Virus record (IMG/VR): IMGVR_UViG_3300041411_000080
Span: 1 to 64,000 of that record
Length of the DNA: 64,000 bases
Reading direction: 5' to 3' (one strand)
The position numbers and the translations under genes are program-made. The number at the start of each line of letters is the position of its first letter. Position 1 is the first letter of the stretch. The notes under the pieces are model-generated. The model did no database searches and was not told where the DNA came from. It saw only the letters and a program-made list of their open reading frames with translations. This document shows, one piece after another, positions 1 to 13,692 of the stretch.

Positions 1-39
1 GTTACGTACTAGGTCGATAATAAGGATCTGAGAGTTCAT
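1..39 (-). CDS. 5' part of a CDS running off the window (MNSQILIIDLVRN...)
   Basis: ATG at 37-39 with GAGG SD, directly after the stop of 42..686. Confidence 0.6.
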   Translation of the reverse strand, partial: MNSQILIIDLVRN

Positions 40-41
40 GC

Positions 42-686
42 TTAGCCTCGTTTGCTACGATTGCGTGGGACCGTTTGGATTTCGCTGAACCGGATGGACA
101 GATCAGCACCGAAGGTATCAGGGAACAGAGTCGACAACTCTTCACGAAGCATTTCGCATACCGCTTCTTTGGTGATGTAGTTGTACAGAATAATCCCGCG
201 ATGGTAAACCATAGCTGGGTAAACCTTACCGCCTGCACGTACCTCAGCGAAGAAGCCACCGTAGGTAGTCGCCTCATGACGTACTTCATGACGGTATACT
301 TCGATCTGCACATTGTTAGCTGAACAGATCTGAACGAACTCGTTGGAGTTACCACCGAACATCACAGGACGCTTACGACCCGTAGTGATGTCTTGCAGAG
401 AACGCATCAACAAAGGTACGTCCGATTCCAGCGTGACCATGTCGATGATCTGACGCATTGCATCCATGAATTGCTTGTGAACGATTTCTTCGGTCTTCTT
501 CGTCCATGCACTGGTATCGGTAATACCGATGACGTTAATGCCAAACCACACGTAACCGTTGTTGTGTTTAACCTTGACGCAGAGGTGTGGAATGTTAGAG
601 AGACCAGACAGGTGCATGACAGTGTAGTCAGTCAACCGTTTGATCACGAGGGTCATATTGGGGCAAGTTACAATTTGCGTAGACAT
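42..686 (-). CDS. hypothetical protein (214 aa)
   Basis: ORF tiles in minus-strand operon with GAGG SD; no motif recognised. Confidence 0.8.
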   Translation of the reverse strand: MSTQIVTCPNMTLVIKRLTDYTVMHLSGLSNIPHLCVKVKHNNGYVWFGINVIGITDTSAWTKKTEEIVHKQFMDAMRQIIDMVTLESDVPLLMRSLQDITTGRKRPVMFGGNSNEFVQICSANNVQIEVYRHEVRHEATTYGGFFAEVRAGGKVYPAMVYHRGIILYNYITKEAVCEMLREELSTLFPDTFGADLSIRFSEIQTVPRNRSKRG

Positions 687-712
687 TGAGGTGGACCTTT
701 AAATAGATTGAG

Positions 713-1387
713 TTATTCGACAGATTGCCAGTTCAGACTACGTCCATACTTAGCCTCGTCGATATAGACCTGACGCTTCAACCATTCATCTTCCCGATTA
801 TCGAACTTATCGAGATGAGTGATGGTGAAACCAACTTGTTTAATGATGTCATTTGCTTGAGCAGTGATGAATTCATTCATTACCGTATTACGAGTACAAG
901 TCGACTGATTCAACAGACGACCGTAGAAGTTAGACAGTAACGTGTGCGTAGGTAATCCCTGACGATCAGCGATCACGAAATAATCCATGGTCGAATCGTG
1001 ACGGATCACATAAAGATTACCCGGTCCAGTAAGATTACGAGTCTTACGGAATGCCAACAAGTCGGCTGTGTATAACTCGTCTTCCAGAATTTGGGCACTG
1101 AAGATCTCAGGCTTAGTCAAGAAGTAGAGTTCAAGTCTAGCACCGCGTTTAACCGCAGCCTTTACACACTCAGCATTGTTACTGGTAGCGTAAGTGGAAA
1201 GGACCTGTTTAAAGTTACGAGTCTCGCTGAGCCATACTTCCCCAGTATCGCACATCAGGATAGCAAAGAAGCCACCCTTGTTCTTCCCCGGTACAGATGT
1301 TTGGTTGGTGACTTCTGCCATGTATTTACGGCAGATCCGACGAGCTTCCGTGTAGCGTGTTTTTGTGATTGGCCGTACAGCGTACAT
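713..1387 (-). CDS. hypothetical protein with two degenerate GIY-YIG-like segments
   Basis: GFFAILMCDTGEVWLSETRNF and GNLYVIRHDSTMDYFVI resemble the GIY..YIG beta-hairpin. Confidence 0.4.
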   Translation of the reverse strand: MYAVRPITKTRYTEARRICRKYMAEVTNQTSVPGKNKGGFFAILMCDTGEVWLSETRNFKQVLSTYATSNNAECVKAAVKRGARLELYFLTKPEIFSAQILEDELYTADLLAFRKTRNLTGPGNLYVIRHDSTMDYFVIADRQGLPTHTLLSNFYGRLLNQSTCTRNTVMNEFITAQANDIIKQVGFTITHLDKFDNREDEWLKRQVYIDEAKYGRSLNWQSVE

Positions 1388-1413
1388 TACTAGCCCTCTA
1401 GATAAAGTTGTGT

Positions 1414-2283
1414 TTATTCTTCTTGTTGGTTGACGTTGAGAATACTGTAGCGAAGACCGAAGTCAGGACATTTGAACTTGGTACCTAGTAGCGGGGTACC
1501 GGTCATTATGTGATCCATAAACTGACCGTACATCTTAGGGCCATCACTGTCAACCAATTTCCATTCTGGACTAAGGGTGTTATGACGATAGAACACGCGT
1601 ACCAGATCAGGGAAAGCCGTAGATAGACGATGATTATCGAGGTCTCCCTGATCCAGGTTACCATCACGCTTCAGTTGCAGGTAGTACTTGTAAAGCTTCC
1701 ACGCTGTACGTGGCTCACCGACGATCATGAAGTCTGTAGCCAGCCGCTTCTCGCTTGGTGGCAACCCCAACAACTTACCAAAGCTATCGCAGTTGCGCGG
1801 AACGTGTACAGGAGTAACACCTTCAACGAGGTAAGTGCGGCAACCCGGACGCATTGCAATCTTCAAAGGTGCGTTGCTACCACGATCACCGTTATCGAAT
1901 ACCCATGGGAGACGATCATCTTGCATATCAACGTCAACCGTAAAGTTCAGCTCACCGCCGAGTTCTTCCTCGAACTTCTTCAGTTGGATACCGAACGTGA
2001 AGATCGTCCACAGGTTAACTTGGCGGGTATAGCGGTAAGGACGTTTGTACTTGAAGCGGTAGACATGTTTATGAACGATCGCCCCTGATGGGAGTACGGT
2101 CTCAGTAATGTCCTTCCGAATATCGGTCTGTAGACCCAGATCGTTCTTTTTTGGCAAGGCTTCCGAAACGCGCTTCAGGATACCTTCGTTAGCCAGGTTG
2201 CTAAGAGTAGACTTATCAGGCTGACTCCAAACAACACTCACCTTGATACGGTCATGGCCGCGATCTCTTTTCTTAGAGGACAT
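1414..2283 (-). CDS. hypothetical protein, paralogue group A (289 aa)
   Basis: FMIVGEPRTAWKLYKYY and SPEWKLV echo the two upstream ORFs. Confidence 0.75.
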   Translation of the reverse strand: MSSKKRDRGHDRIKVSVVWSQPDKSTLSNLANEGILKRVSEALPKKNDLGLQTDIRKDITETVLPSGAIVHKHVYRFKYKRPYRYTRQVNLWTIFTFGIQLKKFEEELGGELNFTVDVDMQDDRLPWVFDNGDRGSNAPLKIAMRPGCRTYLVEGVTPVHVPRNCDSFGKLLGLPPSEKRLATDFMIVGEPRTAWKLYKYYLQLKRDGNLDQGDLDNHRLSTAFPDLVRVFYRHNTLSPEWKLVDSDGPKMYGQFMDHIMTGTPLLGTKFKCPDFGLRYSILNVNQQEE

Positions 2284-3244
2284 GTTCTAGAATCTCCTTT
2301 ACTTCTTTTTGAGTATAACCACGGTTACCCGGACGCTGGGTTTGAAGGACGTTCAGTACCGCCAAAGGGCATAGGCTACTACGAACCGATGCTTCATGTT
2401 TAAACGGTTCTTCTGAATCCAACCACTTATTCATCTGCTTCGTGTAACGATGCAATGGTCCGTAAATATCTTCATCGCTCAACTGCCATGGTTTAGGATG
2501 AACGATAATCCATTCAGGATCAACCCCATTGCCAGCGATACATTTAACCAACAAGATAGCCTTATTATCCATCTTATCAGTCAGGTTAGCAAAGATCGCA
2601 TCATTGGTCAGTGACTGATGATCTTCAGTGAAAGCCCGGCGTGCTTTGGAAGCTAGACGACCCGCTGCACAAGCCTCACCAATCGCCCATACGGCTTCAA
2701 CGCGAGTATCGTAATAGATACTAGCTTTACCCTGTACCGGGTAGGTAACGATCGGTTCCACGTTGTTACCCAGTTGACACGACTTACCGACATAATGAAG
2801 GCTGATAGGTTTCGAGGTATTAACCAGAATACCAAAGTCATGTTCCCATGTAAACCATTCAGGACGAGCCTTAGTGGAGAACTTGGTTGACATCGATCCG
2901 CCGTCCATGAATGGCTTGGCGGTATCAAGCATTTCACCGATGTCAGACATCAATGCCTTCCAGAGCTTTTCAGAACCCAGTTCCTTACAACTCCCCGAGA
3001 TACGGTACTGAGTAGGACCAGCAGCATCCGAGATACCACCTTCTTTCAATACGATCTTCTCGATACGTACCTGCGGATAGATGAAGATATAATCCGCAGG
3101 GCGAACATCGTCCAGTAGTAGACGATAATGCGCAACGATTTCTTTGATTCGGTATTGAATCCACTTACCAGCCAATGCCATCTCTGGTGTCTTCGGTACA
3201 CCACGTCTTACCCACAAGGTAAGCTCATCTTTCACACGACTCAT
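2273..3244 (-). CDS. hypothetical protein, paralogue group A (323 aa)
   Basis: VWAIGEACAAGRL and DPEWIIV; AGGAG SD downstream of an early promoter. Confidence 0.75.
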   Translation of the reverse strand: MSRVKDELTLWVRRGVPKTPEMALAGKWIQYRIKEIVAHYRLLLDDVRPADYIFIYPQVRIEKIVLKEGGISDAAGPTQYRISGSCKELGSEKLWKALMSDIGEMLDTAKPFMDGGSMSTKFSTKARPEWFTWEHDFGILVNTSKPISLHYVGKSCQLGNNVEPIVTYPVQGKASIYYDTRVEAVWAIGEACAAGRLASKARRAFTEDHQSLTNDAIFANLTDKMDNKAILLVKCIAGNGVDPEWIIVHPKPWQLSDEDIYGPLHRYTKQMNKWLDSEEPFKHEASVRSSLCPLAVLNVLQTQRPGNRGYTQKEVKEILEHVL

Positions 3245-3275
3245 TGGATACTCCTAATGTTTGGGATACACAGCT

Positions 3276-3296
3276 GTAATGTAGATGTGAAATAAA
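3276..3296 (-). promoter_or_regulatory. phiKZ-type early promoter
   Basis: minus strand TTTATTTCACATCTACATTAC, variant of a motif recurring 10 times. Confidence 0.6.
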
Positions 3297-3298
3297 TT

Positions 3299-3320
3299 GA
3301 GATGGCCAAAAGGCCACCTC
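3299..3320 (-). terminator. intrinsic terminator
   Basis: GAGGTGGCC-TTTT-GGCCATCTC followed by AATTTATTT. Confidence 0.65.
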
Positions 3321-3332
3321 GATCAGGTTTAT

Positions 3333-4289
3333 TTACACTTCAGCGACTTCACCAACAGTCTCATCTTCAATAGCCAGAGCTGTACCATCATAGACGGTTT
3401 CTTCTTGGGTTTCGAAGGTTGCGTATTCCATGGTCTTGAAGAAGCGCATGTCAGTTGTGTCGATTGCGCTGTTCCAACGAAGGGAAGTGAACGGCAATGG
3501 AGTTTCCATCATGTTCTTCATGTTGATGTTCACATAGCGAACACCTTCCACCACCCAACGATTGCTTTCGTCAAGGTTACTCACAACCCAGTTACCACCA
3601 GCCGGATTCTGGACGTGTACCCATACCAACAGGTTATGCCATTGGATGTTCGGGTGACTACGCATCATCTGCTTGATGTTGATGCGCGCGCCAGTACCGA
3701 CACCGGCTTTAAACATACTTTCACGCTCAGCAGCAATACGACCAGCGTGACTACGGGCGTAGTACTGCCATACACGACGGAACTTATCGACCGCAGTCGG
3801 TTCACCCATTACGGTCAGGCCGTTCAGTGGGGAATTGAAGTGACCGTCCCAGCTTGGGATGTCGTCGCCGGTTGCGTTCCACTGTTCAGCACCTTTACGG
3901 AGCAGTACTTGTGCAGGGCCAGCAACCATTGCCCACGGATCAGGCATCCCACCGTTATCCAGATAGGATTCCAGACGTACGAACTTGCTCTGGTACTTAG
4001 CCAGAATAGCTGCCAGCTCTTGCAGGATGTAGTGCAGGCGAGCGAACTGGTATTGGTTTGTACCCGTATGGCGGATAGGGAATACCAAGGTCAGGTTGCA
4101 ACCATAGCTCTCGTTACCGTTATGGGTAACAGCAGGCTTGACGTGGTCATGGTGATCCATCAGCTCTTTATGAACCGACAGCAGCGCATTGATGTCAGCC
4201 AGCAGATCGATTTCATTTTTGAATGCTTCACGGTCGTTAGCGCCTTGCATGTAAGCGATAGTTACACTAACGGTGTTCGGTTTGGACAT
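3333..4289 (-). CDS. hypothetical protein, paralogue group A (318 aa)
   Basis: LTVMGEPTAVDKFRRVWQYY matches the motif in 1414..2283. Confidence 0.75.
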   Translation of the reverse strand: MSKPNTVSVTIAYMQGANDREAFKNEIDLLADINALLSVHKELMDHHDHVKPAVTHNGNESYGCNLTLVFPIRHTGTNQYQFARLHYILQELAAILAKYQSKFVRLESYLDNGGMPDPWAMVAGPAQVLLRKGAEQWNATGDDIPSWDGHFNSPLNGLTVMGEPTAVDKFRRVWQYYARSHAGRIAAERESMFKAGVGTGARINIKQMMRSHPNIQWHNLLVWVHVQNPAGGNWVVSNLDESNRWVVEGVRYVNINMKNMMETPLPFTSLRWNSAIDTTDMRFFKTMEYATFETQEETVYDGTALAIEDETVGEVAEV

Positions 4290-4360
4290 TACCTTTCCTC
4301 GGAATAATTAAGATGGTTGGGGAACAGTGTCCCCATTGTATTAGCTTAGCCCGTATTAGC

Positions 4361-4834
4361 TTACTTCTGTGGTGGTGCTGCTGGCAAGAAGCTAATGGTT
4401 TGCTGGAGATAGCCCATGTCCTGGAGGTTGAATCGACCTTTATTAACCGGGTTATGTGCAATCTCACCAAATGAAAGAGTCGTGCCACCTGGATTGAGTG
4501 GTTGGCTCGAGACGCTGTTCTTAGTTACTGTGATGATCCAGCCATCGGCAATCACGACAACCGTCACATTGGTCTTACCGATGAAGTCACGAATATGATC
4601 GGCAGTCAGACAGGTTTTATCCTTGAGCTTATGCTCGATCTCCAGCAATGCATCGATGTGACCGATAGCGAAATAAGCTTGTACCTGTGGGCGGTCCCCG
4701 GTCTCGAACAGGTATTCAGAACGCATGCGTGGAGCGCCTTCAGCAGTTCTCAGTGCCTGAATAAAGGTTACATTGTCGTTAGCGCGATAACCGTAAACAA
4801 CACCTTGTGGTACAGCGTGAAGAATGAAAGACAT
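4361..4834 (-). CDS. hypothetical protein, possible Ntn-hydrolase/proteasome-beta-like fold
   Basis: MSFILH start, YFAIGHIDAL, VVVIADGWIITV, LSFGE pattern. Confidence 0.4.
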   Translation of the reverse strand: MSFILHAVPQGVVYGYRANDNVTFIQALRTAEGAPRMRSEYLFETGDRPQVQAYFAIGHIDALLEIEHKLKDKTCLTADHIRDFIGKTNVTVVVIADGWIITVTKNSVSSQPLNPGGTTLSFGEIAHNPVNKGRFNLQDMGYLQQTISFLPAAPPQK

Positions 4835-4843
4835 CTTGAATCC

Positions 4844-5011
4844 TTAGCGGTGAATGATCAGAGTAGACCAAGTGGATACGAGTAACAGAATGAGTGCAAC
4901 AGTCAGAACTTCACGACGGGCGGGAGCATGGCTCTTAAAGCACAATGCTAACCAGCCCATCCAAGTAATGATCGTAACAACCCACAACAGTCCGATGAGT
5001 GTAGGGTCCAT
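4844..5011 (-). CDS. 55-aa two-TM membrane protein (below ORF-track cutoff)
   Basis: MDPTLIGLLWVVTIITWMGWLALCF...VLTVALILLLVSTWSTLIIHR; AGGA SD; fills the gap exactly. Confidence 0.75.
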   Translation of the reverse strand: MDPTLIGLLWVVTIITWMGWLALCFKSHAPARREVLTVALILLLVSTWSTLIIHR

Positions 5012-5018
5012 AAAGGTC

Positions 5019-5453
5019 CTAGAAGTAGTTGGTTGAATCGACGGTCCAGTGCAACGGAAGTTGAATCCCCTTCATCGCCGATTGTACCTCAGAAGGAGTG
5101 CAACCGATACTGAAAGCATGGTTCCCTTCCACGTAATCTTCGAACGTTCGGGCAGCGTTGCGGTAAATATAGAAGCGCTTGGTGGTAGCCACGAAGATAC
5201 GCACGTCATGCTGACTGCTGAGTTCGATCAGCTTTTCTTCAGACAGATTGTTAGTGAGCCGCAATACGGTAGCCACGAAATTAGTCTGGACAGCCGACCC
5301 GGTTACCCACAGTCCGATTGGAGAACAGATGTTACCATCAGGCTCTGTGAACAAGCGTGCTGTCGATTGGGAAATGTAAGCCCAATCCTTAGCGATGGAT
5401 TTCAACCCACCGAACTTAAGGGTCCGTTCGGTGATGTCAATATAGAAGCTCAT
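5019..5453 (-). CDS. hypothetical protein, possible Ntn-hydrolase-like fold
   Basis: MSFYID start, LWVTGSAVQ, RIFVATTKRFYIY, AFSIGC. Confidence 0.4.
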   Translation of the reverse strand: MSFYIDITERTLKFGGLKSIAKDWAYISQSTARLFTEPDGNICSPIGLWVTGSAVQTNFVATVLRLTNNLSEEKLIELSSQHDVRIFVATTKRFYIYRNAARTFEDYVEGNHAFSIGCTPSEVQSAMKGIQLPLHWTVDSTNYF

Positions 5454-5695
5454 GCCGTCTCCTTGGGTTTGATCGCCCGAATGTTAAAACCTTCAGGGAT
5501 GTCAGCAATCTTTTGACCGAGAGTGTTAACCCGGAAGAAGAAGTCATAACCGAAGAGATGTTTCTCTTCGTCATGCACCAGTTGCACACTACCGTCTTGA
5601 ATGTAGATGTCACGAGCTGGGAGGAACTTGTGACCATGCGAACGAGATTGGTAGATACCGTTCGGCACCGTTTGACCATTTAGTTCACGACTCAT
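5450..5695 (-). CDS. hypothetical protein (81 aa)
   Basis: ORF tiles in operon. Confidence 0.7.
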   Translation of the reverse strand: MSRELNGQTVPNGIYQSRSHGHKFLPARDIYIQDGSVQLVHDEEKHLFGYDFFFRVNTLGQKIADIPEGFNIRAIKPKETA

Positions 5696-5698
5696 TAC

Positions 5699-5887
5699 TT
5701 AATCCTTTTTGTAGTACTTCGATTTAAGACTGTCTGCCAAACCATAGTCCGGGTCACGTACGGGTTCAATCCCATCTGTTGTACCGGTCATGATACGAGG
5801 TGGTGCATGACGAGGCATTTCTGCTACTACACGAGTATTAGTAATGCCTGCCTTCAATACTTCTTCTCTTAACTTTTCCCAATTCAT
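5699..5887 (-). CDS. 62-aa stand-alone fragment of ribonucleotide reductase alpha (NrdA-like)
   Basis: NWEKLREEVLKAGITNTRVVAEMP...TGTTDGIEP matches the class Ia NrdA WE.LR..I...G..N....A.MP...T.GIEP segment; AGGAG SD before ATG 5887. Confidence 0.7.
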   Translation of the reverse strand: MNWEKLREEVLKAGITNTRVVAEMPRHAPPRIMTGTTDGIEPVRDPDYGLADSLKSKYYKKD

Positions 5888-5936
5888 CTTATACTCCTGA
5901 CCACATAAAGCCCCTGCTATTAAGCAGGGACCTATG

Positions 5937-6767
5937 TCAGTGTCGAACGGTTTCGATTTCGTGAGTGAGAGCCATAGTGACAACCGATTCGTGGAATGGG
6001 TTACGACGACTTATTTCATTATGCTTGTAATCACGCAGGGTGACCTGTAAAGGAAACTTACGATACCCGTTGTAGATCAACTTGGTGACGGCTTCGTTGG
6101 ACAACGGTTCTTCTGGTCGAACCCAACTCATTCCACTACGAGTTAGTTTGATCATAGTTCCGACATCGGTGATCAGATACATGGTTGCCCATGCACCCAG
6201 TGCTTCAGCAATGCGTTCCAGTTGTAGTTCAGTCATCCCTCCACACGCAAAATAGCTGGATTCGCGCACTTCCCGTTTTGCATGCTTGTAATGACGCATG
6301 GCATTACGAACACCAACACTACTACCAACGAACAGGATGTCTTTGATGACCAAGCCATGTGCTGGGTAACCACTGATGTCCCACGGGCGATTGCAAACGT
6401 CCTCGCCTTCGAACTGGATGATCTCATCACCGGGGGCAACCCAGATTGATGCACGGCCATCGCCATGTAACTTCAGCACGTGACGGGAATCAGCGTAACC
6501 GGGATTATGGCAGTCGAGTGCGTTATGGACGTTCTGGGTCTCAGCCATCTTTTCAAACGCGTGACGCAGTTCCCAACTAGGGAAGAAGATAACTGCCTCG
6601 TACAACCCTTTCGAGTTACGCGATGGTAAATCGACCCAACGAATGATGTCGACTTTCTTCTTACCATGGTGAGCTTTGTTGAGATCAGCCATTGTCCCAT
6701 GCAGTGCTACTAGGTAGGGAGCTGGGCAATCACGTTTAACGAACAACTGGTATACTCGACCGGACAT
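5937..6767 (-). CDS. hypothetical protein (276 aa)
   Basis: ORF tiles; C-half ILFVGSSVG / MYLITDVGTMIKL resembles 4361 and 5019. Confidence 0.75.
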   Translation of the reverse strand: MSGRVYQLFVKRDCPAPYLVALHGTMADLNKAHHGKKKVDIIRWVDLPSRNSKGLYEAVIFFPSWELRHAFEKMAETQNVHNALDCHNPGYADSRHVLKLHGDGRASIWVAPGDEIIQFEGEDVCNRPWDISGYPAHGLVIKDILFVGSSVGVRNAMRHYKHAKREVRESSYFACGGMTELQLERIAEALGAWATMYLITDVGTMIKLTRSGMSWVRPEEPLSNEAVTKLIYNGYRKFPLQVTLRDYKHNEISRRNPFHESVVTMALTHEIETVRH

Positions 6768-6768
6768 A

Positions 6769-7092
6769 TCAGTTCACCTTTTCGAATTTGAATTCTTTAT
6801 CCGCAGCTTTCCAATTGGGCCAGTAGATCCCACGGATCATAATCCGCTTAGTCAGGATGCTGCTATCTGGGTCCATAGTGAAAAGACGGATCTGGAACGA
6901 GTCACCCGGTTCGATATCGGTGAGTTCGTTAAGTACCGGACGAATGCGTTCCAACACCATGTCTGGATCTGTACCCAGATCGACCAGATGCTCGATAGTG
7001 CTAGGGTTGGAGATAACCCCAACGAGATTGTCAATCGAACCACAAGCGTAGTAAGCCTTGTCCTCAGACAGGTTGTAGAATTCAACGTACAT
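6769..7092 (-). CDS. hypothetical protein (107 aa)
   Basis: ORF tiles in operon; AGGAG SD. Confidence 0.75.
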   Translation of the reverse strand: MYVEFYNLSEDKAYYACGSIDNLVGVISNPSTIEHLVDLGTDPDMVLERIRPVLNELTDIEPGDSFQIRLFTMDPDSSILTKRIMIRGIYWPNWKAADKEFKFEKVN

Positions 7093-7095
7093 GTG

Positions 7096-7389
7096 TTACT
7101 CCTGATTGATAAATGTGTAAAGTTTGCTACGGCTGGTAGTCGAGTCCTTAACAGACTTAACCGAGATATTGACGGGCGCAGTGTGTTCCGAATCTTTACG
7201 GATCAAGCCACGCATTACTTTAGGGAAAGCCGCCATCAACTGTTCTTGTACGGCTGTAGCCAGATCACGAGTGCGGTATTGCTGTGCACTGCGTTGTTTG
7301 GTAGTGGTACCGAAACCTTTCTCCGATTCAGTCAGGAGCAGCTTCTCTTGATCAACACCCAAACACAACTCAATAACGTACGATGCCAT
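7096..7389 (-). CDS. hypothetical protein (97 aa)
   Basis: ORF tiles in operon. Confidence 0.7.
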   Translation of the reverse strand: MASYVIELCLGVDQEKLLLTESEKGFGTTTKQRSAQQYRTRDLATAVQEQLMAAFPKVMRGLIRKDSEHTAPVNISVKSVKDSTTSRSKLYTFINQE

Positions 7390-7678
7390 GATTAGACCCC
7401 GCTACACGTTTGATACTGACCATGATTTTTTGACCAACGTACTCCACCAGATCATTAGCTGGATGATCTTTGAAAGCAAGTACGATATCTTCACCCATGT
7501 CACGGAAGATATCAGCAGCTACCATCGCATTGCCAGCAGACAGATAACCCGGTACTTCGAACTGGTTGTAGTTATCCACGCTATCAGGCCAAAACAGACG
7601 GACACCGACCGTGTAGGTATCTGGGATAGTAGGAGACAGACTTTCCACGATTTCTTGTAATGTAAAAACGCGTTCCAT
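7370..7678 (-). CDS. hypothetical protein (102 aa, start MERVF)
   Basis: AGAGGT SD before ATG 7678. Confidence 0.7.
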   Translation of the reverse strand: MERVFTLQEIVESLSPTIPDTYTVGVRLFWPDSVDNYNQFEVPGYLSAGNAMVAADIFRDMGEDIVLAFKDHPANDLVEYVGQKIMVSIKRVAGSNHGIVRY

Positions 7679-7680
7679 TA

Positions 7681-7806
7681 TTAACCTCTTGAAATCCAGA
7701 TAAGGGCAACACTGCAAATAATCAAGAATAGCAATACCGCTGCCCCTACTTGGTTACTTGCATCGCCGTGTACTTGACGATCGTAATCTTCATCGCTATA
7801 ACGCAT
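7681..7806 (-). CDS. 41-aa single-TM microprotein
   Basis: MRYSDEDYDRQVHGDASNQVGAAVLLFLIICSVALIWISRG; fills the gap. Confidence 0.65.
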   Translation of the reverse strand: MRYSDEDYDRQVHGDASNQVGAAVLLFLIICSVALIWISRG

Positions 7807-7811
7807 CACGA

Positions 7812-8342
7812 TCAGATCTCGATATTAACTGTCAGGAGGACTTCGGTTGGTTCCAAAGTACTCAACTGTTGACGACGGAAAAGATGCAACATCGTTTCCA
7901 TTGGAGTATGGGTATCGACCTTTGGTGCGTCGATAAAGCTGAACGTGAAAGCTTCAGTCATCAATGGATTCATTGCCCAAGAGACTACATCGGTTTCAGT
8001 GTTAAGCTTAGCCAGCAACACTTGGAAGGTATCACCAGTCTCGCCGTGGATATCAACGTAGTCATCCGAGTAAGTCTTGATGTATTGGGGATTACCCTCA
8101 GCGTCTTGAATTACGATACCATCGATTTCCAGTGACTCTTGACGCTCACCGTAGCTGGTGAGGTTCAAACGAATTGCATAGTGATCCCGTGGGACCTGCA
8201 CATAACCTTCAGCCAATCGGTTCATCGCAGTGTTAGCCTCGAAATAAGACAACACGCCATCAGCAACTGTAGCTGGATTCCCTTCGGTATCGATCGCGTA
8301 GGAAACACCAGTGAGTTGATTTACGAACAGAACTTTAGACAT
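7812..8342 (-). CDS. hypothetical protein (176 aa)
   Basis: ORF tiles; GAGGTGA SD. Confidence 0.8.
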   Translation of the reverse strand: MSKVLFVNQLTGVSYAIDTEGNPATVADGVLSYFEANTAMNRLAEGYVQVPRDHYAIRLNLTSYGERQESLEIDGIVIQDAEGNPQYIKTYSDDYVDIHGETGDTFQVLLAKLNTETDVVSWAMNPLMTEAFTFSFIDAPKVDTHTPMETMLHLFRRQQLSTLEPTEVLLTVNIEI

Positions 8343-8350
8343 AGGTCACC

Positions 8351-8701
8351 TCAGATAGATAGTTCGAATGTGTACAGTCTTTTACCGGATGCATCTACAA
8401 CAGACATGCCATACTGGCCTTCCGGGTATTTCTCAAAACGCAGTGTCTCGATAAGGTCTGTAAAATCTCGAGCATACAACCCAAGATTGTAACGAGCTTG
8501 TTCAACGTCGTCTACATAGACGATACGGTGACCATGATCGATGAACTTATCTTTAACAAAGAACGCTCGCTTGGAGTCGATTAAGGTAACCAGTGTTAAA
8601 CACCGATTATCATCTTTGTCATACACGGCGTAGTGATAATCTCGGAACAGGGTCCAATTCATATACGCTGGACGTAATGAATCGATATCCTTTACAGCCA
8701 T
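8351..8701 (-). CDS. hypothetical protein (116 aa)
   Basis: TAATG coupling. Confidence 0.75.
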   Translation of the reverse strand: MAVKDIDSLRPAYMNWTLFRDYHYAVYDKDDNRCLTLVTLIDSKRAFFVKDKFIDHGHRIVYVDDVEQARYNLGLYARDFTDLIETLRFEKYPEGQYGMSVVDASGKRLYTFELSI

Positions 8702-8964
8702 TAAGCCATACCTGGTGGACGCACACCAACCTGAGTAGGATCTTTACGCAGTTGCCCTTCACCTACCCAGACGCGATGGATATCACTCGCTGGAGTAATG
8801 CCATCACCTAAAGCCCGTACACTGTGAGGTGTATCGACCTTGCCCGGATCATAAGCCATGATTTGAAGACGGCCATTCTCTACCGCAAACACTTCACCCT
8901 TTGGACCCATCAGGTCCGCCCCAGCCAAACAAAACTCCCCAGTAAAGAAATTACGCTGCTGCAT
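8701..8964 (-). CDS. hypothetical protein (87 aa)
   Basis: ORF tiles in operon. Confidence 0.7.
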   Translation of the reverse strand: MQQRNFFTGEFCLAGADLMGPKGEVFAVENGRLQIMAYDPGKVDTPHSVRALGDGITPASDIHRVWVGEGQLRKDPTQVGVRPPGMA

Positions 8965-9556
8965 TTAAAACCCCCGTTGTGATAGGCTTAGGAATCGGAG
9001 TGCCGAATGGAACGTAGTCCAGTAGTAGTTGATTTTTAGAGGACACAATCGGGAACTCCGTATCGCCCGGATTACGCCAGACGATCTGTATTGCCTTTGC
9101 TTGTTCAAGATGATTCTGGTCTACCAGCCAGTGACGCAGCATTTGCGCTTGACCGTATACCATGCGCTCAGCGTCCACAGGACGCACTTGGAAGAACTGA
9201 CCTATCTCGGTGTTAGCCAATTCACGGTTCATCGCCATAGCGACTTCCTGAGAGGTCTTAGCGCCATAGCCGTTCTGACTCAACCAACTGTGCATCGCCT
9301 TGATGTGCGGATACAGTAGGTTATAGTTGAAGTCGTTGATAGCAATACCGGAGACGTAAATCTCAGGTAGGTTGAAACGAGAGAACCCGACAGTGTAGAA
9401 CCCGTAAGGGATACCATCATTAGGTTGACCGAACAATGGACGCACTGTGAACTCGACCCGATCCAGTTGATCGTTGATCTGTTCCAGAATTTCTTTTATG
9501 TCGCGTTTAAACAGATGTGCCGAACGAACATAGTCGCTCTTAGTGTACGCTGTCAT
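8951..9556 (-). CDS. DUF4262-like protein
   Basis: FYTVGFSRFNLPEIYVSGI and C-terminal IQIVW....FP. Confidence 0.5.
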   Translation of the reverse strand: MTAYTKSDYVRSAHLFKRDIKEILEQINDQLDRVEFTVRPLFGQPNDGIPYGFYTVGFSRFNLPEIYVSGIAINDFNYNLLYPHIKAMHSWLSQNGYGAKTSQEVAMAMNRELANTEIGQFFQVRPVDAERMVYGQAQMLRHWLVDQNHLEQAKAIQIVWRNPGDTEFPIVSSKNQLLLDYVPFGTPIPKPITTGVLNAAA

Positions 9557-9743
9557 TCAATACCTCGATCTGATCACTGGTGGCATAGAAGTCATTCATT
9601 GGCTCACTAACTTTAGCAACCTGAAAGACTTTACCGTTACGAGTTTCGTCTAGGATGTAAAGTTCATCACCAGCTTCGGCCATAGTGCAATCTACATCGA
9701 GTACAGTAATGACGATCTTGCGTAAAGCCCTTGCCCTTTTCAT
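9540..9743 (-). CDS. hypothetical protein (67 aa)
   Basis: ATGA coupling. Confidence 0.7.
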   Translation of the reverse strand: MKRARALRKIVITVLDVDCTMAEAGDELYILDETRNGKVFQVAKVSEPMNDFYATSDQIEVLNDSVH

Positions 9744-10027
9744 AACTCTCCCCCGAATACGGAATCCATATCTGTTAGCTGAACGGTTTCGATCTGATCA
9801 TGGTTGTCGCAGTTCATGACTCGGAATCCACCACCTGGGTTTTCCGTATCTTCACTGAGTACCATCAGGTCATCACCTTCATTTGCAAACTTTACTTCAG
9901 TATAGCCTTTCTCACGATCTGTGCGATGAATGAAAATGTCGTTAGTCGCTTGTAATAACATACCACGCGCTACATCACTCTTCGAGATGCCATCGATCAG
10001 TTGTGTAAGGTTCTTGAAGAAGCACAT
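9740..10027 (-). CDS. hypothetical protein (95 aa)
   Basis: AGGGG SD, downstream of an early promoter. Confidence 0.75.
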   Translation of the reverse strand: MCFFKNLTQLIDGISKSDVARGMLLQATNDIFIHRTDREKGYTEVKFANEGDDLMVLSEDTENPGGGFRVMNCDNHDQIETVQLTDMDSVFGGEL

Positions 10028-10122
10028 GTTATTTCCCCTGCTCAGTAATTGTTGGCTTCTTTCTCCAAGATTGGTCTAGGATACTATTTGTTGCCAGTTG
10101 AGATAGTGTTGATTGCACAGAC

Positions 10123-10140
10123 ATGATGTAAATCTGAATT
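10123..10140 (-). promoter_or_regulatory. phiKZ-type early promoter
   Basis: AATTCAGATTTACATCAT. Confidence 0.6.
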
Positions 10141-10157
10141 CCGTTGTACTGACATAA

Positions 10158-10177
10158 AGCCTCCCCGAAGGGAGGCT
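10158..10177 (-). terminator. intrinsic terminator, cUUCGg loop
   Basis: AGCCTCCC-TTCG-GGGAGGCT then TTTAT. Confidence 0.8.
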
Positions 10178-10182
10178 ATTTA

Positions 10183-10626
10183 TTATTCGATGAATTGAAA
10201 CAAAGCCCCGATGATTGGTGAACCTTCATCCGCCCGAATGTAGGTACGACCAGACTGCCAACTGAAATGGATGTTGATGCCCCAACGTTTTCCATTGATC
10301 TTGGTAACGTAGCCCGTATAAGTATTACCGACACCCTTCTCGATTGGATGAGGGTTACGCGGTTTTAACTTAACGATCTGTACATTACCCTCTTCGTCCA
10401 GATAGCTGATCTCACGAATGTAGATATACGACCAGTCTTCATTCGTACCGTAGGCTTGTCGGAAATCGAAAGTACGTCCATCTGCCAAGATGTGCACGGT
10501 CTTCTCGAATTCTTGGTTAGCCAACATCACTTGCACTTCGTTCCGTTGGAACCAAGGGTGAAGAATGTTGAGGTTGTAACATGGTCCCGGTTTAGGGAGG
10601 CTGTTAGGTCGGGATGTGTTGTACAT
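10183..10626 (-). CDS. hypothetical protein (147 aa, start MYNTS)
   Basis: AAGGA SD before ATG 10626. Confidence 0.7.
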   Translation of the reverse strand: MYNTSRPNSLPKPGPCYNLNILHPWFQRNEVQVMLANQEFEKTVHILADGRTFDFRQAYGTNEDWSYIYIREISYLDEEGNVQIVKLKPRNPHPIEKGVGNTYTGYVTKINGKRWGINIHFSWQSGRTYIRADEGSPIIGALFQFIE

Positions 10627-11035
10627 AAACGTCCTTTTCATTAACTGGGCCTTCAAAGGTCTCAGTCAAGAAGTTGTAGTTACGACCGGGTACACTTGCG
10701 CTACAGCTTTTAAACTGTACGAAGTTATTGTATCGATCGAAGTTGAATACGAAGACTGGTTGACCCAATACCCTAGCAAGCGACGCTTTCTTTGCGTTAT
10801 GGGTGAAACTTGCATTACCCTGACCTTTGCAGATCAAGTACTGTGTAAGTTTACCTTTAGGTAACCGAATGTGAACTGGGTCAGTAAAGGACATATATCG
10901 AGTTGGATCAAACTCACTGAGTGTAATCCATTGACCGTCACGTCGATTCTGCCAGTTAGCTAGGAGACTCCCAACCTTCCAACCCCCTATTACTATTAGT
11001 GCCGCTTTAAGTATGACGAGTATAGTCATGGTCAC
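10604..11035 (-). CDS. membrane-anchored hypothetical protein (143 aa)
   Basis: N-terminal hydrophobic helix TILVILKAALIVIGGW. Confidence 0.7.
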   Translation of the reverse strand: MTMTILVILKAALIVIGGWKVGSLLANWQNRRDGQWITLSEFDPTRYMSFTDPVHIRLPKGKLTQYLICKGQGNASFTHNAKKASLARVLGQPVFVFNFDRYNNFVQFKSCSASVPGRNYNFLTETFEGPVNEKDVYVQHIPT

Positions 11036-11307
11036 CCCGAGAATGGTTTCCCGATTACCAGATCCCGATGCAGGAAATGTTGTTTCGGTACTACCACTTC
11101 TTTCAATTCGGTTCCGGTGCGGTTATCGGCGATCTTCAAGATCTCACCCTGAGGTGTAATCTCAATTCTAACTGGAGGGATACCCACCAGACCCATGGAT
11201 ACGAAATCGAGATCATCGACCGTAGACATAGCGACTTGGTGATCGTGTCCCATCCAATCAGCAACCCAATGACCGCACTCGGTACGCTTTAGCTTAAGTT
11301 CGCTCAT
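11032..11307 (-). CDS. hypothetical protein (91 aa)
   Basis: GAGGG SD; ORF tiles. Confidence 0.75.
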   Translation of the reverse strand: MSELKLKRTECGHWVADWMGHDHQVAMSTVDDLDFVSMGLVGIPPVRIEITPQGEILKIADNRTGTELKEVVVPKQHFLHRDLVIGKPFSG

Positions 11308-11335
11308 AGTCCCTCTTAGGGGACCAGAGTCCCCG

Positions 11336-11827
11336 TTAGTTCAAAGTCTCGCGTGTGTGGTACTCTGCCAGATCGTTATTACCACCAGCGATCTCCATCA
11401 TATTCATTACGTTGATGAGTAGAGTACGTTGCACACCATTGATCTCAACACACAGCTCTACGCTGGCCGGGAAACATTGGATGCGCTGGACTTTGCCGAA
11501 GGCATAGATGAAGGTCAGCATTGGATCAACCATTGCCAGTTCGTCATCGTTCATGTTTTGCAGGTAAGGTACCAGCGTTTTCTTGACGATCCAGTTCAGG
11601 ACCGTTCCAGAATGTTGCACTTGATCGACACCCCACTGCAACAGATGCGGGATGCATTCCAGATTCGATTCGATACTGTACGCAGCATCATGCCAGGTCA
11701 TCGGAACCTTAACATAGTTATCCGATGGGAATGAGGTCACCAGTGGACCATGCTGCAAGAAGGAGACCCAGCGCAGGTAATCGTTAGTGGTGCCGTAAAG
11801 GTCGCCGTTGCTATGAACTTGTTCCAT
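11336..11827 (-). CDS. hypothetical protein (163 aa)
   Basis: GGAG SD; ORF tiles. Confidence 0.8.
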   Translation of the reverse strand: MEQVHSNGDLYGTTNDYLRWVSFLQHGPLVTSFPSDNYVKVPMTWHDAAYSIESNLECIPHLLQWGVDQVQHSGTVLNWIVKKTLVPYLQNMNDDELAMVDPMLTFIYAFGKVQRIQCFPASVELCVEINGVQRTLLINVMNMMEIAGGNNDLAEYHTRETLN

Positions 11828-11844
11828 TATCTTACTCCAGTATG

Positions 11845-12552
11845 TTATTTTTTAACGATTGTGGCGTCAGTAAAGTCGCCGTTGAATTGGACCACGTAAT
11901 TGTGGCCAACGAAGGAAATCTGCGATATATTTTCCCAGTGGTCCTCTAGGATAATTCCATTCATGAGGTGGGTCTTCAAAGCACGTTGAATGATGATCTC
12001 CGGGTTATGGAACAACTTACGGATAGTCTCACTCATCATTGTTTCAACACCGATACAAGATAACCCCAAGGCCATCATTGTTGCTTGTTCTTGTGGGAAC
12101 AACATTGCACGAAGGTAAGTAGCCCCACGCACAGCGCGGAGTGCGGGGTGCTCATCATTGTCTTTAAGGCTACCGACCACGTAAAGTTCCGGGAATAAGC
12201 GATAGCTTTTCTCACGTACCGTCACTCGGTAGGTATACTCTGAATTTTCCTCAGAGTACATTATATCGTAGGCTTGATCTCGGGTCCAGATTTCGCCATC
12301 TGAATTCAACTCAACCGAACTGCCGATTTTCCACGAATCACGGAATGCACACATGAACTTGGCAACCGTTTCGTGATTCACCATGTAGTGGCCGTAACGC
12401 TGGGCATCCCATGGTTGGTCGGTATCGTTGTGATGTGGATGGACCACGAAGAACTGTGTACCTCGTACCCACTCGATGTAGATACTGATGTTGGTTTCTT
12501 CAGGGTAGCCATATATGTTACGGTTGAAGCGTAAAGTGTCCAGCAGTTGCAT
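11845..12552 (-). CDS. hypothetical protein (235 aa)
   Basis: AGGAGG SD. Confidence 0.8.
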   Translation of the reverse strand: MQLLDTLRFNRNIYGYPEETNISIYIEWVRGTQFFVVHPHHNDTDQPWDAQRYGHYMVNHETVAKFMCAFRDSWKIGSSVELNSDGEIWTRDQAYDIMYSEENSEYTYRVTVREKSYRLFPELYVVGSLKDNDEHPALRAVRGATYLRAMLFPQEQATMMALGLSCIGVETMMSETIRKLFHNPEIIIQRALKTHLMNGIILEDHWENISQISFVGHNYVVQFNGDFTDATIVKK

Positions 12553-12595
12553 TAATGCCTCCTAGCGATTTAACGAAAAAAAGAATTTAGCTAAC

Positions 12596-12613
12596 GGGAG
12601 TCCGAAGACTCCC
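12596..12613 (-). terminator. intrinsic terminator, cUUCGg loop
   Basis: GGGAGTC-TTCG-GACTCCC with a downstream T-run. Confidence 0.7.
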
Positions 12614-12631
12614 ATTGGCTTATTGATCCGA

Positions 12632-12865
12632 TTAGCGAAAGAGTTCAGCTGCCAATGCCTGTTTAAAGGCAAGACGCTGCTGCTCATCGCCACCCCACAA
12701 CTCCACACTGGTAAACCCGTCTGCATTCGGGGAACCGAACGCATTACAGGTTTTACCGAGTGGGGAGGAGATGGAGTTTTGAATGATCCGCTCGCGTTGA
12801 GCGTTCATACGAACAACATCAGGGGTCAGGATCGTTACGTTTACTACGGTCTGCAAATTCAACAC
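12632..12865 (-). CDS. hypothetical protein (77 aa)
   Basis: AAGGAG SD. Confidence 0.75.
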   Translation of the reverse strand: MLNLQTVVNVTILTPDVVRMNAQRERIIQNSISSPLGKTCNAFGSPNADGFTSVELWGGDEQQRLAFKQALAAELFR

Positions 12866-12876
12866 AGCGATGCTCC

Positions 12877-13224
12877 TTATTTAGCTTCAGCGATGAGACG
12901 ATCTACCCAAGTGAGCATTTGTTGCTCAGCTTTGTGCAGGTGGAAGTTATTTGGATCGAGTTCTTCACGCACTTCATATGCAAGTACGTTCTTAGCAGCG
13001 GTCAGGGCTTCCTTCCAGCATTCTTTGGAAGCACCATTGCGCTGCATGTGATTAGTCATAGCGCGGATGCGAGCCGAAGCTTCATCAATCCAGCGCTCAG
13101 CGCGGCGGCGATCGTTTTCACGTTTGGCCACAAGCTGTGCTTGGTAAACCGAGTTAACGAGTAATGCAACGCCAACGACAGCCATGGCGCCATTTGCATA
13201 ATCTTCAAAAGTCCATCTAGCCAT
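12877..13224 (-). CDS. membrane-anchored hypothetical protein (115 aa)
   Basis: AMAVVGVALLVNSVY hydrophobic segment, then helical region. Confidence 0.75.
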   Translation of the reverse strand: MARWTFEDYANGAMAVVGVALLVNSVYQAQLVAKRENDRRRAERWIDEASARIRAMTNHMQRNGASKECWKEALTAAKNVLAYEVREELDPNNFHLHKAEQQMLTWVDRLIAEAK

Positions 13225-13253
13225 GATTTAGAATCCTTCAGCGTTTGAGTTAA

Positions 13254-13496
13254 TTAGTGCAGGGAGATCTTGCAGATTTGTTCGTCCAGCTTTTGAATAG
13301 CCGGAATGACTTCAGCACGGATGCGCGGGCAACCTTCGAAGTTGTACAGGTCCAGGTACAGCTGGTCGAAGAAGCCACGCATTTCTTCATCCGCTTCGTA
13401 GGAAGGGGTTTGAGCTGCGATCAGTTCTTCGATCTTGGTAGCTACAGCCAGGTTGGCTTGAGCGATCCAGGTGTTAACAGTAGGCAGAGTTTGCAT
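13254..13496 (-). CDS. hypothetical acidic protein (80 aa, start MQTLPT)
   Basis: AGGA SD before ATG 13496. Confidence 0.7.
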   Translation of the reverse strand: MQTLPTVNTWIAQANLAVATKIEELIAAQTPSYEADEEMRGFFDQLYLDLYNFEGCPRIRAEVIPAIQKLDEQICKISLH

Positions 13497-13530
13497 GATT
13501 AATTTCCTATAGATAAATTTGAGTTTTAGA

Positions 13531-13668
13531 TTAAGCTGGTTTATTTTCAGTGTCTTCAACGAAGTACACGTAAACAACACTAACCGTTACGACAACAGCA
13601 GTAACGGCCAACACGGCGGCTGCACCAGCAACCACCCCTTTGAAAAAATCGCGGGCTACTTCTTCCAT
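13531..13668 (-). CDS. 45-aa single-TM microprotein
   Basis: MEEVARDFFKGVVAGAAAVLAVTAVVVTVSVVYVYFVEDTENKPA; AGGAG SD. Confidence 0.75.
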   Translation of the reverse strand: MEEVARDFFKGVVAGAAAVLAVTAVVVTVSVVYVYFVEDTENKPA

Positions 13669-13692
13669 TTATTTAACTCCTGTAATTAAAAG

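What the first reader, a model, noticed from the sequence alone, without database searches (positions are those of the whole stretch)
5699..5887. 62-aa stand-alone piece of ribonucleotide reductase NrdA with its own strong SD
Seen: MNWEKLREEVLKAGITNTRVVAEMPRHAPPRIMTGTTDGIEPVRD with an AGGAG SD and clean stop. Known: class Ia NrdA carries DWE.LR..I...GLRNS...A.MP....S......TNGIEP near the substrate phosphate site. The rest of NrdA is absent around it. Inference: a retained, expressed mini-module (decoy, dominant-negative or RNR modulator) rather than a decaying remnant.
Basis: partly seen in the sequence, partly recalled or inferred. Interest (0 to 1): 0.7.

Follow-up and report, generated by a model that had tools for sequence, protein, structure and literature searches.

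The report
Conserved mini-protein derived from phage NrdA
A 62-residue gene in a 321-kb nucleus-forming Pseudomonas-type jumbo phage is an intact, selected member of a previously uncharacterised family of tiny proteins cut out of the ribonucleotide reductase large subunit, which keeps that enzyme's structural residues but has lost its substrate-binding ones.

Summary
Window 5699-5887 (minus strand) encodes a 62-aa ORF with an AGGAG Shine-Dalgarno 6 nt upstream. Residues 2-45 are homologous to NrdA residues 598-639 (E. coli numbering). No other NrdA piece lies nearby, but the phage has an intact 763-aa nrdA about 30 kb away across the genome ends.

It is not a decaying remnant:
- Against relatives about 97% identical in DNA it shows 9 synonymous and 3 non-synonymous changes (omega 0.08, the same as its neighbours).
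- Nine alleles from public metagenomes are all open.
- Homologues exist as 54-116-aa ORFs, or fused into larger proteins, in 201phi2-1, Viktualia, PhiPA3, PS119XW-like phages, Phabio, Ralstonia RP12/RP31 and about 20 metagenomic clusters. phiKZ has none.
- The mini-proteins form one group separate from all NrdAs (support 97/96).
- They share derived changes: the NrdA loop E-S-S-S is replaced by x-x-P-P-R.
- Many carry a second motif, KSKYY, resembling the NrdA Tyr730/Tyr731 strand.

Function is untested. My best guess is a catalytically dead mimic of the NrdA face that meets NrdB, acting as a binding module or decoy. Structure and complex predictions were uninformative, and no expression data were obtained.

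The parts
5699..5887 (-). mini-NrdA coding sequence, 62 codons plus TAA
   Evidence: It is intact in relatives L006/L007 and in nine alleles. Omega is 0.08.
5753..5884 (-). Core, residues 2-45, homologous to NrdA 598-639 (helix, barrel strand ending in MP, loop, GI.P.R). The NrdA loop residues E-S-S-S are replaced here by H-A-P-P.
5711..5725 (-). KSKYY motif, residues 55-59. It is a second family motif resembling the NrdA strand G-x-K-[ST]-x-Y-Y (Tyr730/Tyr731 in E. coli).
   Evidence: Conserved in many family members. The likeness to NrdA is suggestive only and is not detected formally.
5894..5898 (-). Shine-Dalgarno AGGAG, 6 nt before the ATG
   Evidence: identical in L006 and L007
5909..5933 (-). 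11-bp stem-loop between the upstream gene and the mini-ORF
   Evidence: Fold of the 81-nt stretch 5880-5960 that holds it: -27.6 kcal/mol, z=-4.3. The stem is conserved while the loop differs in L007.
5937..6767 (-). Upstream gene g276 (276 aa, unknown function, member of a ~275-aa paralogous family). It precedes the mini-module in this phage, the L034 contig and Viktualia.
5450..5695 (-). Downstream gene g81 (81 aa, phrog_10237, unknown function). It starts 3 nt after the mini-ORF stop and is fused in frame to the mini-module in metagenomic protein P0004.

Best explanation
Shown: the ORF is a real protein-coding gene under selection. It belongs to an old family of chimallivirus micro-proteins that arose once from the C-terminal barrel region of the class Ia ribonucleotide reductase large subunit, NrdA. 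The family keeps the NrdA residues that build the local fold (E. coli numbering W599, L602, A618, M620-P621, G634-I635, P637, R639). It has replaced the residues that NrdA uses for chemistry (E623 and the Ser-rich loop 622-625, N633). Many members also carry a KSKYY motif that resembles the Tyr730/Tyr731 strand.

Inferred: in NrdA these elements sit together on the face that meets the small subunit NrdB (E623, N633, R639, Y730 and Y731 are neighbours at the alpha/beta interface). The most likely mode of action is therefore a catalytically dead structural mimic of that patch. This would be a small module, disordered on its own, that binds an RNR partner (NrdB of the host, of the phage or of a competitor, or a factor that recognises NrdA). 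As a stand-alone protein it would compete or modulate. In other phages it would act as a tethering module fused to other sequences.

I put about 0.85 on 'selected NrdA-derived micro-protein family' and about 0.35 on the RNR-directed binding mechanism.
For: Homology of the core.

Purifying selection: 9 synonymous against 3 non-synonymous changes versus L006, omega 0.08 against 0.09 pooled for 22 neighbouring genes; binomial p=1.4e-4. The core has one replacement (H27R) against eight silent changes. Nine alleles are all open.

Deep conservation: homologues in PS119XW-like phages, Phabio and PhiPA3, in 201phi2-1 gp399 and Viktualia, and in Ralstonia RP12/RP31, plus 20 representative clusters in 1.8 billion proteins, mostly 60-116 aa. 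In the 8-kb loci of PS119XW, Phabio and PhiPA3, the mini-module is the only one of 17 window genes still detectable.

Single origin: the mini-proteins and the NrdA segments are split by one branch, support 97/96.

Shared derived signature: all 12 NrdAs have MP-x-E-[ST/A]-S-S and N-[GS/A]-[IMPL]-x-P. Nearly all mini-proteins have P-[PAI]-R in place of that loop, and a D/E/P/Q-type residue instead of the Asn.

Spatial neighbourhood of E623, N633, R639 and Y730/Y731 at the alpha/beta interface: PMC13585066.

NrdA barrel fragments can assemble in trans: PMC3045599.

No confident fold alone: ESM model pLDDT 0.33 and AF2 pLDDT 65 with only helix 3-13. This fits folding on a partner.

Modular use: C-terminal in Viktualia CDS0126, N-terminal in Phabio PHABIO_39, internal in P0008, P0016 and P0019.
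Against: There is no direct evidence of transcription, translation or binding. The complex prediction with the phage's own NrdB dimer scored 0.00, which the tool rates as no answer. In the Pawinskivirus lineage omega is 0.40-0.45 against 0.03-0.09 for neighbours, so constraint there is relaxed. The tail after residue 45 varies in length and sequence; 201phi2-1, Viktualia, Phabio and RP12 lack KSKYY. The KSKYY-to-Tyr730/731 equation is not detected by profile comparison and is individually non-significant in a motif search. phiKZ does without the gene. Most conserved residues are buried in NrdA, so a mimic of a surface patch is not the only reading.
Confidence: 0.4

Rival explanations
1. The family is a selected protein-binding or targeting module whose present function has nothing to do with ribonucleotide reduction. 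The NrdA-derived peptide was co-opted, for example as a tag or adaptor recognised by some chimallivirus machinery, and the NrdA-like residues are kept only because they stabilise its own small fold.
For: The module is found stand-alone and also fused at the N-terminus, the C-terminus or internally to unrelated sequences. In Phabio it shares one ORF with a piece of a DnaB-like helicase. All RNR-specific ligand residues are lost. The gene moves around within a variable block of small genes of unknown function. There was no predicted contact with NrdB (formally no answer).
Against: Residues kept across the family are precisely the NrdA signature ones, including R639 and possibly the Tyr dyad, which face NrdB in the holoenzyme. 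Every complete genome checked that carries the module also carries nrdA; nrdB was looked for only in this phage. No alternative partner is indicated by any result.
Confidence: 0.3
2. It is a functionless leftover of an old partial duplication or capture of nrdA. It persists as an open frame only because translation through this spot is needed for the operon (coupling to the downstream gene, whose SD lies in the last codons), not because of the peptide itself.
For: The stop is 3 nt from the next start, and the next gene's SD (AAGGA) lies within codons 60-62. The tail is variable, and a homopolymer indel variant changes the C-terminus without obvious harm. Omega is 0.4 in Pawinskivirus. phiKZ lacks it. 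The models do not fold.
Against: Coupling would not conserve specific residues. Yet W3, P25 and P42 are invariant, and L6, A22, P29, G39 and I40 nearly so, across 21 sequences that share only 36-60% identity (95% for the one near-copy, P0001). The core shows 1 replacement against 8 silent changes. The module survives in different gene neighbourhoods and in fusions. It is the only gene of the block recognisable between genera.
Confidence: 0.12
3. It is a scar of mobile-element activity: exon or extein flank carried along by a homing endonuclease, intron or intein that once sat in nrdA. Alternatively it is the C-terminal half of a split 'genes-in-pieces' NrdA.
For: RNR genes are frequent targets of such elements, and Aeh1 has a working split NrdA (PMC3045599). 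Phabio joins an NrdA piece to a DnaB-like helicase piece, two classic intein and endonuclease hosts.
Against: Pfam finds no endonuclease, intein or other known domain in g276, g81 or g144, and PHROGs none in the seven genes scanned either side. No intron-like RNA was found in 3000-9000. The phage's own NrdA is intact, 763 aa. The Aeh1 split lies between C439 and C462, not at residue 598. Selection on the peptide and its single ancient origin do not fit a passive scar.
Confidence: 0.05

Closest known systems
Class Ia ribonucleotide reductase large subunit NrdA (Pfam PF02867 barrel), residues 598-640 plus possibly the Tyr730/Tyr731 strand
   Same: Clear sequence homology of the core. It has the same order of helix, strand ending in MP, loop and GI.P.R, and possibly the K-[ST]-x-Y-Y strand.
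   Different: It has 62 residues instead of about 760. It has no ATP cone, no catalytic cysteines and no C-terminal CxxC. The E-S-S-S loop and the conserved Asn are replaced in every family member. It forms a separate group from all NrdAs.
Split 'genes-in-pieces' NrdA-a/NrdA-b of Aeromonas phage Aeh1 (PMC3045599)
   Same: It is a separately translated piece of the NrdA barrel in a phage, and it shows that NrdA fragments can associate in trans.
   Different: Aeh1 lacks an intact nrdA; its pieces together are a complete enzyme, split between C439 and C462 by mobE. Here nrdA is intact, no endonuclease is adjacent, and the piece has lost active-site residues.
Small intrinsically disordered RNR regulators of yeasts (Sml1, Spd1, Dif1), recalled from general knowledge
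   Same: Comparable size and predicted lack of stable fold alone. A proposed action by binding an RNR subunit would be analogous.
   Different: No sequence relationship was tested or is expected. Those proteins are not derived from the enzyme itself, and binding is not shown here.
MicroProteins and pseudoenzyme fragments (small proteins derived from a larger protein that keep an interaction surface and lack the functional residues), as a general concept
   Same: It is derived from a larger enzyme, keeps structural residues, loses functional ones, and co-exists with the intact parent gene in the same genome.
   Different: Interaction with the parent complex, the defining property, has not been demonstrated.
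PHROG families phrog_32116 (81 aa, unknown function) and phrog_36555 (172 aa, labelled ribonucleotide reductase)
   Same: The mini-ORF and its relatives match these small phage families from their first residues, so members have been catalogued before. One JGI record names P0002 'ribonucleotide reductase alpha subunit'.
   Different: The matches are weak (E 0.007 and 3e-5). No function is attached, and I found no paper on them.

Membership tests
Class Ia RNR large subunit NrdA | Complete ten-stranded alpha/beta barrel domain (about 520 profile positions) with N-terminal domains | tested here: not met
   Only profile positions 365-407 of 523 are present, and the protein is 62 aa.
Class Ia RNR large subunit NrdA | Sequence homology to the NrdA barrel | tested here: met
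   Pfam E=1e-5, over the cut-off; PDB NrdA 598-639; hhalign probability 98.5%, E=3e-15.
Class Ia RNR large subunit NrdA | Loop after M-P carrying E623 and the serines 622-625, and the conserved Asn633 before G-I-x-P | tested here: not met
   All 12 NrdAs aligned have E-[ST/A]-S-S and N. The window protein has H-A-P-P and D, and the whole family lacks them.
Class Ia RNR large subunit NrdA | Tyr730-Tyr731 dyad in the motif G-x-K-[ST]-x-Y-Y | tested here: inconclusive
   KSKYY is present at residues 55-59 and in many relatives. Profile comparison does not extend to it. In the motif HMM, mini-proteins are 6 of the 10 best hits after the phage's own NrdA, but each has E>0.7.
Split NrdA (Aeh1 type) | No intact nrdA; complementary N-terminal fragment gene and an intervening homing endonuclease | tested here: not met
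   An intact 763-aa nrdA is present. The neighbours have no endonuclease domain. The split point differs.
Decaying pseudogene remnant | Frame disruptions, further broken pieces nearby, neutral substitution pattern | tested here: not met
   The frame is open in nine alleles. There are no other NrdA pieces in 1-14000. Omega is 0.08, p=1.4e-4. Caveat: omega is 0.40-0.45 in Pawinskivirus.
Chimallivirus mini-NrdA family (defined here) | Core W-x-x-L ... A-x-M-P-x-x-x-P-[PAI]-R ... G-I-x-P-[VI]-R in a short ORF or module, in a jumbo phage that also has intact nrdA | tested here: met
   genome context; the mini-proteins form one group.
MicroProtein / dominant-negative mimic | Physical binding to the parent protein's complex | not testable with these tools
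   Complex prediction with the NrdB dimer gave 'no answer'. No experimental data.

The most novel reading that the evidence does not exclude
The mini-proteins are phage-encoded protein regulators of ribonucleotide reductase. They would be a dead copy of the NrdA patch around R639 and Tyr730/Tyr731 that docks on NrdB (of the host or of a co-infecting phage). There it would block holoenzyme formation or drain the tyrosyl radical, giving the nucleus-forming phage control over who makes dNTPs in the infected cell. To my knowledge no phage protein inhibitor of RNR built from the enzyme's own interface has been described.
Probability: 0.15. Interest if true: 0.8.

Novelty: new variant of a known kind. 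Interest (0 to 1): 0.6.

Why it matters
Jumbo nucleus-forming phages carry hundreds of small genes of unknown function. This one has a traceable origin: a piece of an essential enzyme, stripped of its chemistry but kept for a very long time beside the intact enzyme gene. That makes a concrete, testable hypothesis (binding to an RNR subunit) available for a whole family of proteins present in model phages (201phi2-1 gp399, an unannotated ORF in PhiPA3, PS119XW-like phages, Phabio, RP12). If they do act on RNR, they would be a new way for viruses to control nucleotide supply, and a natural example of micro-protein evolution from an enzyme interface. If not, they still illustrate how enzyme fragments are recruited as modules in phage proteins.

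Tried and rejected
- Recent copy of the phage's own nrdA: rejected (BLASTP E=0.31; tree).
- Recurrent birth from each phage's own nrdA: rejected. The mini-proteins group together, support 97/96, and share derived residues.
- Origin inside the chimallivirus NrdA clade: unresolved. Profile scores are similar for chimallivirus, T4-like, T5-like, cyanophage and Nitrincola NrdAs.
- Same boundary as the Aeh1 split NrdA-b: rejected; that split lies at 439-462.
- A piece of RNA polymerase beta in P0008 (weak PHROG hit): not supported by tblastn.
- Word-based searches found only near-copies (mini-ORF, g81). The pattern scan of viral contigs found nothing.
The first job was lost and was repeated.
- AF2 on the family alignment: pLDDT 65, only one helix. 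AF2 on the natural fusion P0004: pLDDT 47. ESM Atlas: only fragment clusters and a poor model.
- Complex prediction with the NrdB dimer: no answer.
- phiKZ-type early promoter motif TATATTAC: not enriched. The sigma-70 and terminator scan was uninformative.

Full report
**The sequence.** On the minus strand, ATG at 5885-5887 opens a 62-codon frame that ends in TAA at 5699-5701.
- AGGAG lies at 5894-5898, 6 nt before the ATG.
- A longer frame from a TTG at 5983 overlaps the end of the upstream gene and a stem-loop. It is unlikely to be the real start.
- All genes in this part of the window run on the minus strand and are tightly packed. The next gene (g81, 5450-5695) starts 3 nt after the stop.
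- An 11-bp stem-loop (5909-5933) separates the upstream gene g276 from the mini-ORF. The 81-nt stretch 5880-5960 that holds it folds at -27.6 kcal/mol, z=-4.3.
- The stem is conserved while the loop differs in a relative.

**Is it NrdA-like?** Yes.
- Pfam PF02867 matches residues 2-45 to profile positions 365-407 of 523, at E=1e-5 and above the curated cut-off.
- Solved NrdA chains match at residues 598-639 in E. coli numbering.
- A profile of 21 family members against a profile of NrdA C-terminal regions gives probability 98.5% and E=3e-15.
- tblastn of 11 NrdAs against window 1-14000 finds nothing else above noise, so there are no further broken pieces.

**The genome.** The window is the first 64 kb of a 320,858-bp virus record with direct terminal repeats.
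- It encodes an intact 763-aa NrdA (295,533-297,824), NrdB (387 aa) and a PhuZ-type tubulin.
- Its NrdA is 80% identical to that of Pseudomonas phage 201phi2-1, 79% to Viktualia, 69% to PS119XW, 66% to PhiPA3 and 63% to phiKZ.
- It is therefore a Serwervirus-like nucleus-forming jumbo phage.
- Near-identical DNA occurs in rhizosphere, plant and soil metagenomes.
- The mini-ORF is not a recent copy of the phage's own nrdA.

**Selection.**
- Two relatives about 97% identical in DNA (L006, L007) carry the gene with the same start, SD and stop.
- Against L006 there are 9 synonymous and 3 non-synonymous changes. This gives omega 0.08, against 0.09 pooled over 22 neighbouring genes.
- Three or fewer replacements out of 12 changes has p=1.4e-4 under neutrality.
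- Within residues 1-45 there is one replacement (H27R) and eight silent changes. The other two replacements (D52V, S53G) lie in the tail.
- Nine protein alleles from over 30 public contigs are all full length.
- One allele has an extra A in an A5 run. This changes the last residue and adds five (KKD becomes KKGLSNES).
- In an independent lineage (PS119XW against HPP-Temi and phiHQ) omega is 0.40-0.45, while neighbours have 0.03-0.09. Constraint there is weaker and the 5' end looks recombinant.

**A family, not a singleton.** tblastn and profile searches find homologues in the following phages.

| Phage | Form of the module |
|---|---|
| PS119XW, BRkr, phiHQ, HPP-Temi, HHBS36_1, phiLBG22, PA1C | 69-aa ORF annotated hypothetical (phiLBG22's record has no annotation) |
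| PhiPA3 | unannotated 72-aa ORF overlapping the start of gp344 |
| 201phi2-1 | gp399, 54 aa |
| Viktualia | last 50 residues of the 138-aa CDS0126 |
| Phabio | residues 21-68 of the 171-aa PHABIO_39 |
| Ralstonia RP12 and RP31 | 81-96-aa ORF |
| phiKZ | none found; the profile hits only its NrdA |

- An exhaustive phmmer search of 1.8 billion representative proteins returns 20 clusters at E<1e-3. Most are 60-116 aa; some are 170-458 aa with the module embedded.
- Three of the six contigs looked up show jumbo-phage markers: a 325-kb contig colinear with this window, a PhuZ-like tubulin with a divergent DNA polymerase, and a phiTE-type domain. The other three were too short or carried no marker.
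- Every complete genome checked that has the module also has a full nrdA, 22-33 kb away.
- In the 8-kb loci of PS119XW, Phabio and PhiPA3, the module is the only one of 17 window genes that phmmer still recognises.
- Its position within the block of small genes differs between 201phi2-1 and this phage.

**What was kept and what was lost.** In an alignment of 24 mini-proteins and 12 NrdA segments:
- Both groups keep W599, L602, A618, M620-P621, G634-I635, P637 and R639.
- Every NrdA has E-[ST/A]-S-S after M-P, and an Asn before [GS/A]-[IMPL]-x-P.
- Every mini-protein has lost these. Nearly all have x-x-P-[PAI]-R and T-[DE]-G-I-x-P instead.
- W3, P25 and P42 are invariant, and L6, A22, P29, G39 and I40 nearly so, across the 21-sequence family alignment.
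- A maximum-likelihood tree of the 45-residue core puts all mini-proteins on one side of a single branch (ultrafast bootstrap 97, SH-aLRT 96). They do not sit next to their own phage's NrdA.
- The family therefore arose once. Which NrdA lineage it came from is not resolved.

**The second motif.**
- K-S-K-Y-Y or a close variant follows the core, after a linker of variable length, in the window protein, PS119XW and many metagenomic members.
- It resembles the invariant NrdA strand G-x-K-[ST]-x-Y-Y that carries Tyr730 and Tyr731.
- If homologous, about 90 residues between the two NrdA elements were deleted.
- I could not establish this formally. Profile comparisons stop after the core.
- In a search with a 13-column motif model, mini-proteins are 6 of the 10 best hits after the phage's own NrdA, among 462 proteins. 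Each has E>0.7 and they are not independent.
- 201phi2-1, Viktualia, Phabio and RP12 lack the motif.
- I treat the equation as likely but unproven.

**How it might work.**
- According to a recent simulation paper on the E. coli holoenzyme, E623 lies next to Y730/Y731 and N633 belongs to the same hydrogen-bond network. R639 faces E52 of the beta subunit across the alpha/beta interface, adjacent to Y731 (PMC13585066).
- The elements retained by the mini-protein are thus neighbours on the NrdA face that meets NrdB. The chemically active residues among them are replaced.
- NrdA barrel fragments are known to assemble in trans in phage Aeh1 (PMC3045599).
- Neither ESM (pLDDT 0.33) nor AlphaFold2 with the family alignment (pLDDT 65, only helix 3-13) gives a stable fold. 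This fits a peptide that folds on a partner.
- My preferred reading is therefore a catalytically dead mimic of that NrdA patch, which binds an RNR partner as a competitor or modulator.
- The fused versions in other phages would use it as a tether.
- This is inference. The only test available, a complex prediction with the phage's own NrdB dimer, scored 0.00, which the tool rates as no answer.
- A natural fusion of the module with the downstream g81 homologue (P0004) is a simple loss of the stop codon. Its model is poor, pLDDT 47.

**Rivals.**
- A co-opted module with a function unrelated to RNR is nearly as likely (0.30). It is favoured by the variety of fusion partners and the loss of all RNR ligand residues.
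- A functionless frame kept for translational coupling (0.12) does not explain residue-specific conservation across genera and contexts.
- A scar of a homing endonuclease, intron or intein, or half of a split enzyme (0.05), is contradicted on four counts. nrdA is intact. No endonuclease domain lies nearby. No intron-like RNA was found. The peptide is under selection.

**Novelty.**
- Members of the family sit in PHROGs as phrog_32116 (unknown function) and phrog_36555 (labelled ribonucleotide reductase). One JGI record calls a member 'ribonucleotide reductase alpha subunit'.
- I found no paper that describes them.
- The concept of a small dead derivative of a larger protein is known. This instance, its conservation in nucleus-forming phages and its particular content are, as far as I can tell, undescribed.

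Noticed in passing
L005:3941-4456 (Phabio PHABIO_39): One 171-aa ORF joins the NrdA-derived module (aa 21-68) to a piece of a DnaB-like replicative helicase (aa 76-124). The helicase piece has Pfam divDNAB E=1.5e-7 and is 45% identical to phiKZ gp118. It is a chimera of fragments of two conserved replication and nucleotide enzymes.
   Followed up: partly
L011:1489-1707 (PhiPA3 record 282,736-282,954): An unannotated 72-aa ORF of the mini-NrdA family lies between gp343 and gp344 and overlaps the start of gp344 by 53 nt.
   Followed up: yes
window 5909-5933: A strong stem-loop lies between g276 and the mini-ORF. The stem is conserved and the loop differs in L007. A 32-nt near-copy lies on another contig of a relative (run X21), so it may be a repeated intergenic element. 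Only one copy exists in the window itself.
   Followed up: partly
window 6763-7089: A relative about 94% identical (run X21, 87.8-kb contig) skips 325 bp that correspond almost exactly to gene g107 (6769-7092), while keeping g276 and the mini-ORF. g107 looks dispensable.
   Followed up: no
window 5705-5710: The A5 run in codons 60-61 carries a +1 insertion in one metagenomic relative (run X6; protein P0147). This changes the tail KKD to KKGLSNES. Depth is low, so it may be an assembly error.
   Followed up: partly
P0004 (metagenomic, 170 aa); window 5450-5887: In one relative the mini-ORF and the downstream g81 homologue are a single frame, because the stop codon is lost and the internal Met is retained. 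This is either a natural fusion or a sequencing error.
   Followed up: partly
window 5937-6767; L034:6276-7951; L013:2152-3810: g276 belongs to a family of ~275-aa proteins of unknown function. It is present in tandem pairs in a related 325-kb contig and in 201phi2-1 (gp410/gp411). Similar-sized genes lie near the module in PhiPA3, PS119XW and Phabio. There is no Pfam or PHROG hit.
   Followed up: no
window 54638-54910 (+) and G000 288621-289502: A 90-aa ORF resembles part of a 293-aa protein elsewhere in the genome (pairwise E=3e-6). A few other small ORFs of this genome likewise match parts of larger ones (for example 316993-317334 against 100037-100903, and 110454-110726 against 104478-105323). 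All are of unknown function.
   Followed up: partly
L010 (Phabio nrdA); PA1C hits H50 and H104: Phabio's nrdA open frame is 841 aa rather than about 763, and it scores lowest against the family profile. In PA1C both nrdA and the mini-ORF appear in two pieces, which suggests frameshift errors in that record.
   Followed up: no
whole window: DNA of this phage or close relatives is present in at least 20 rhizosphere, plant, soil, food and freshwater metagenome runs, and in one run of a named organism. It is a widespread environmental jumbo phage.
   Followed up: no
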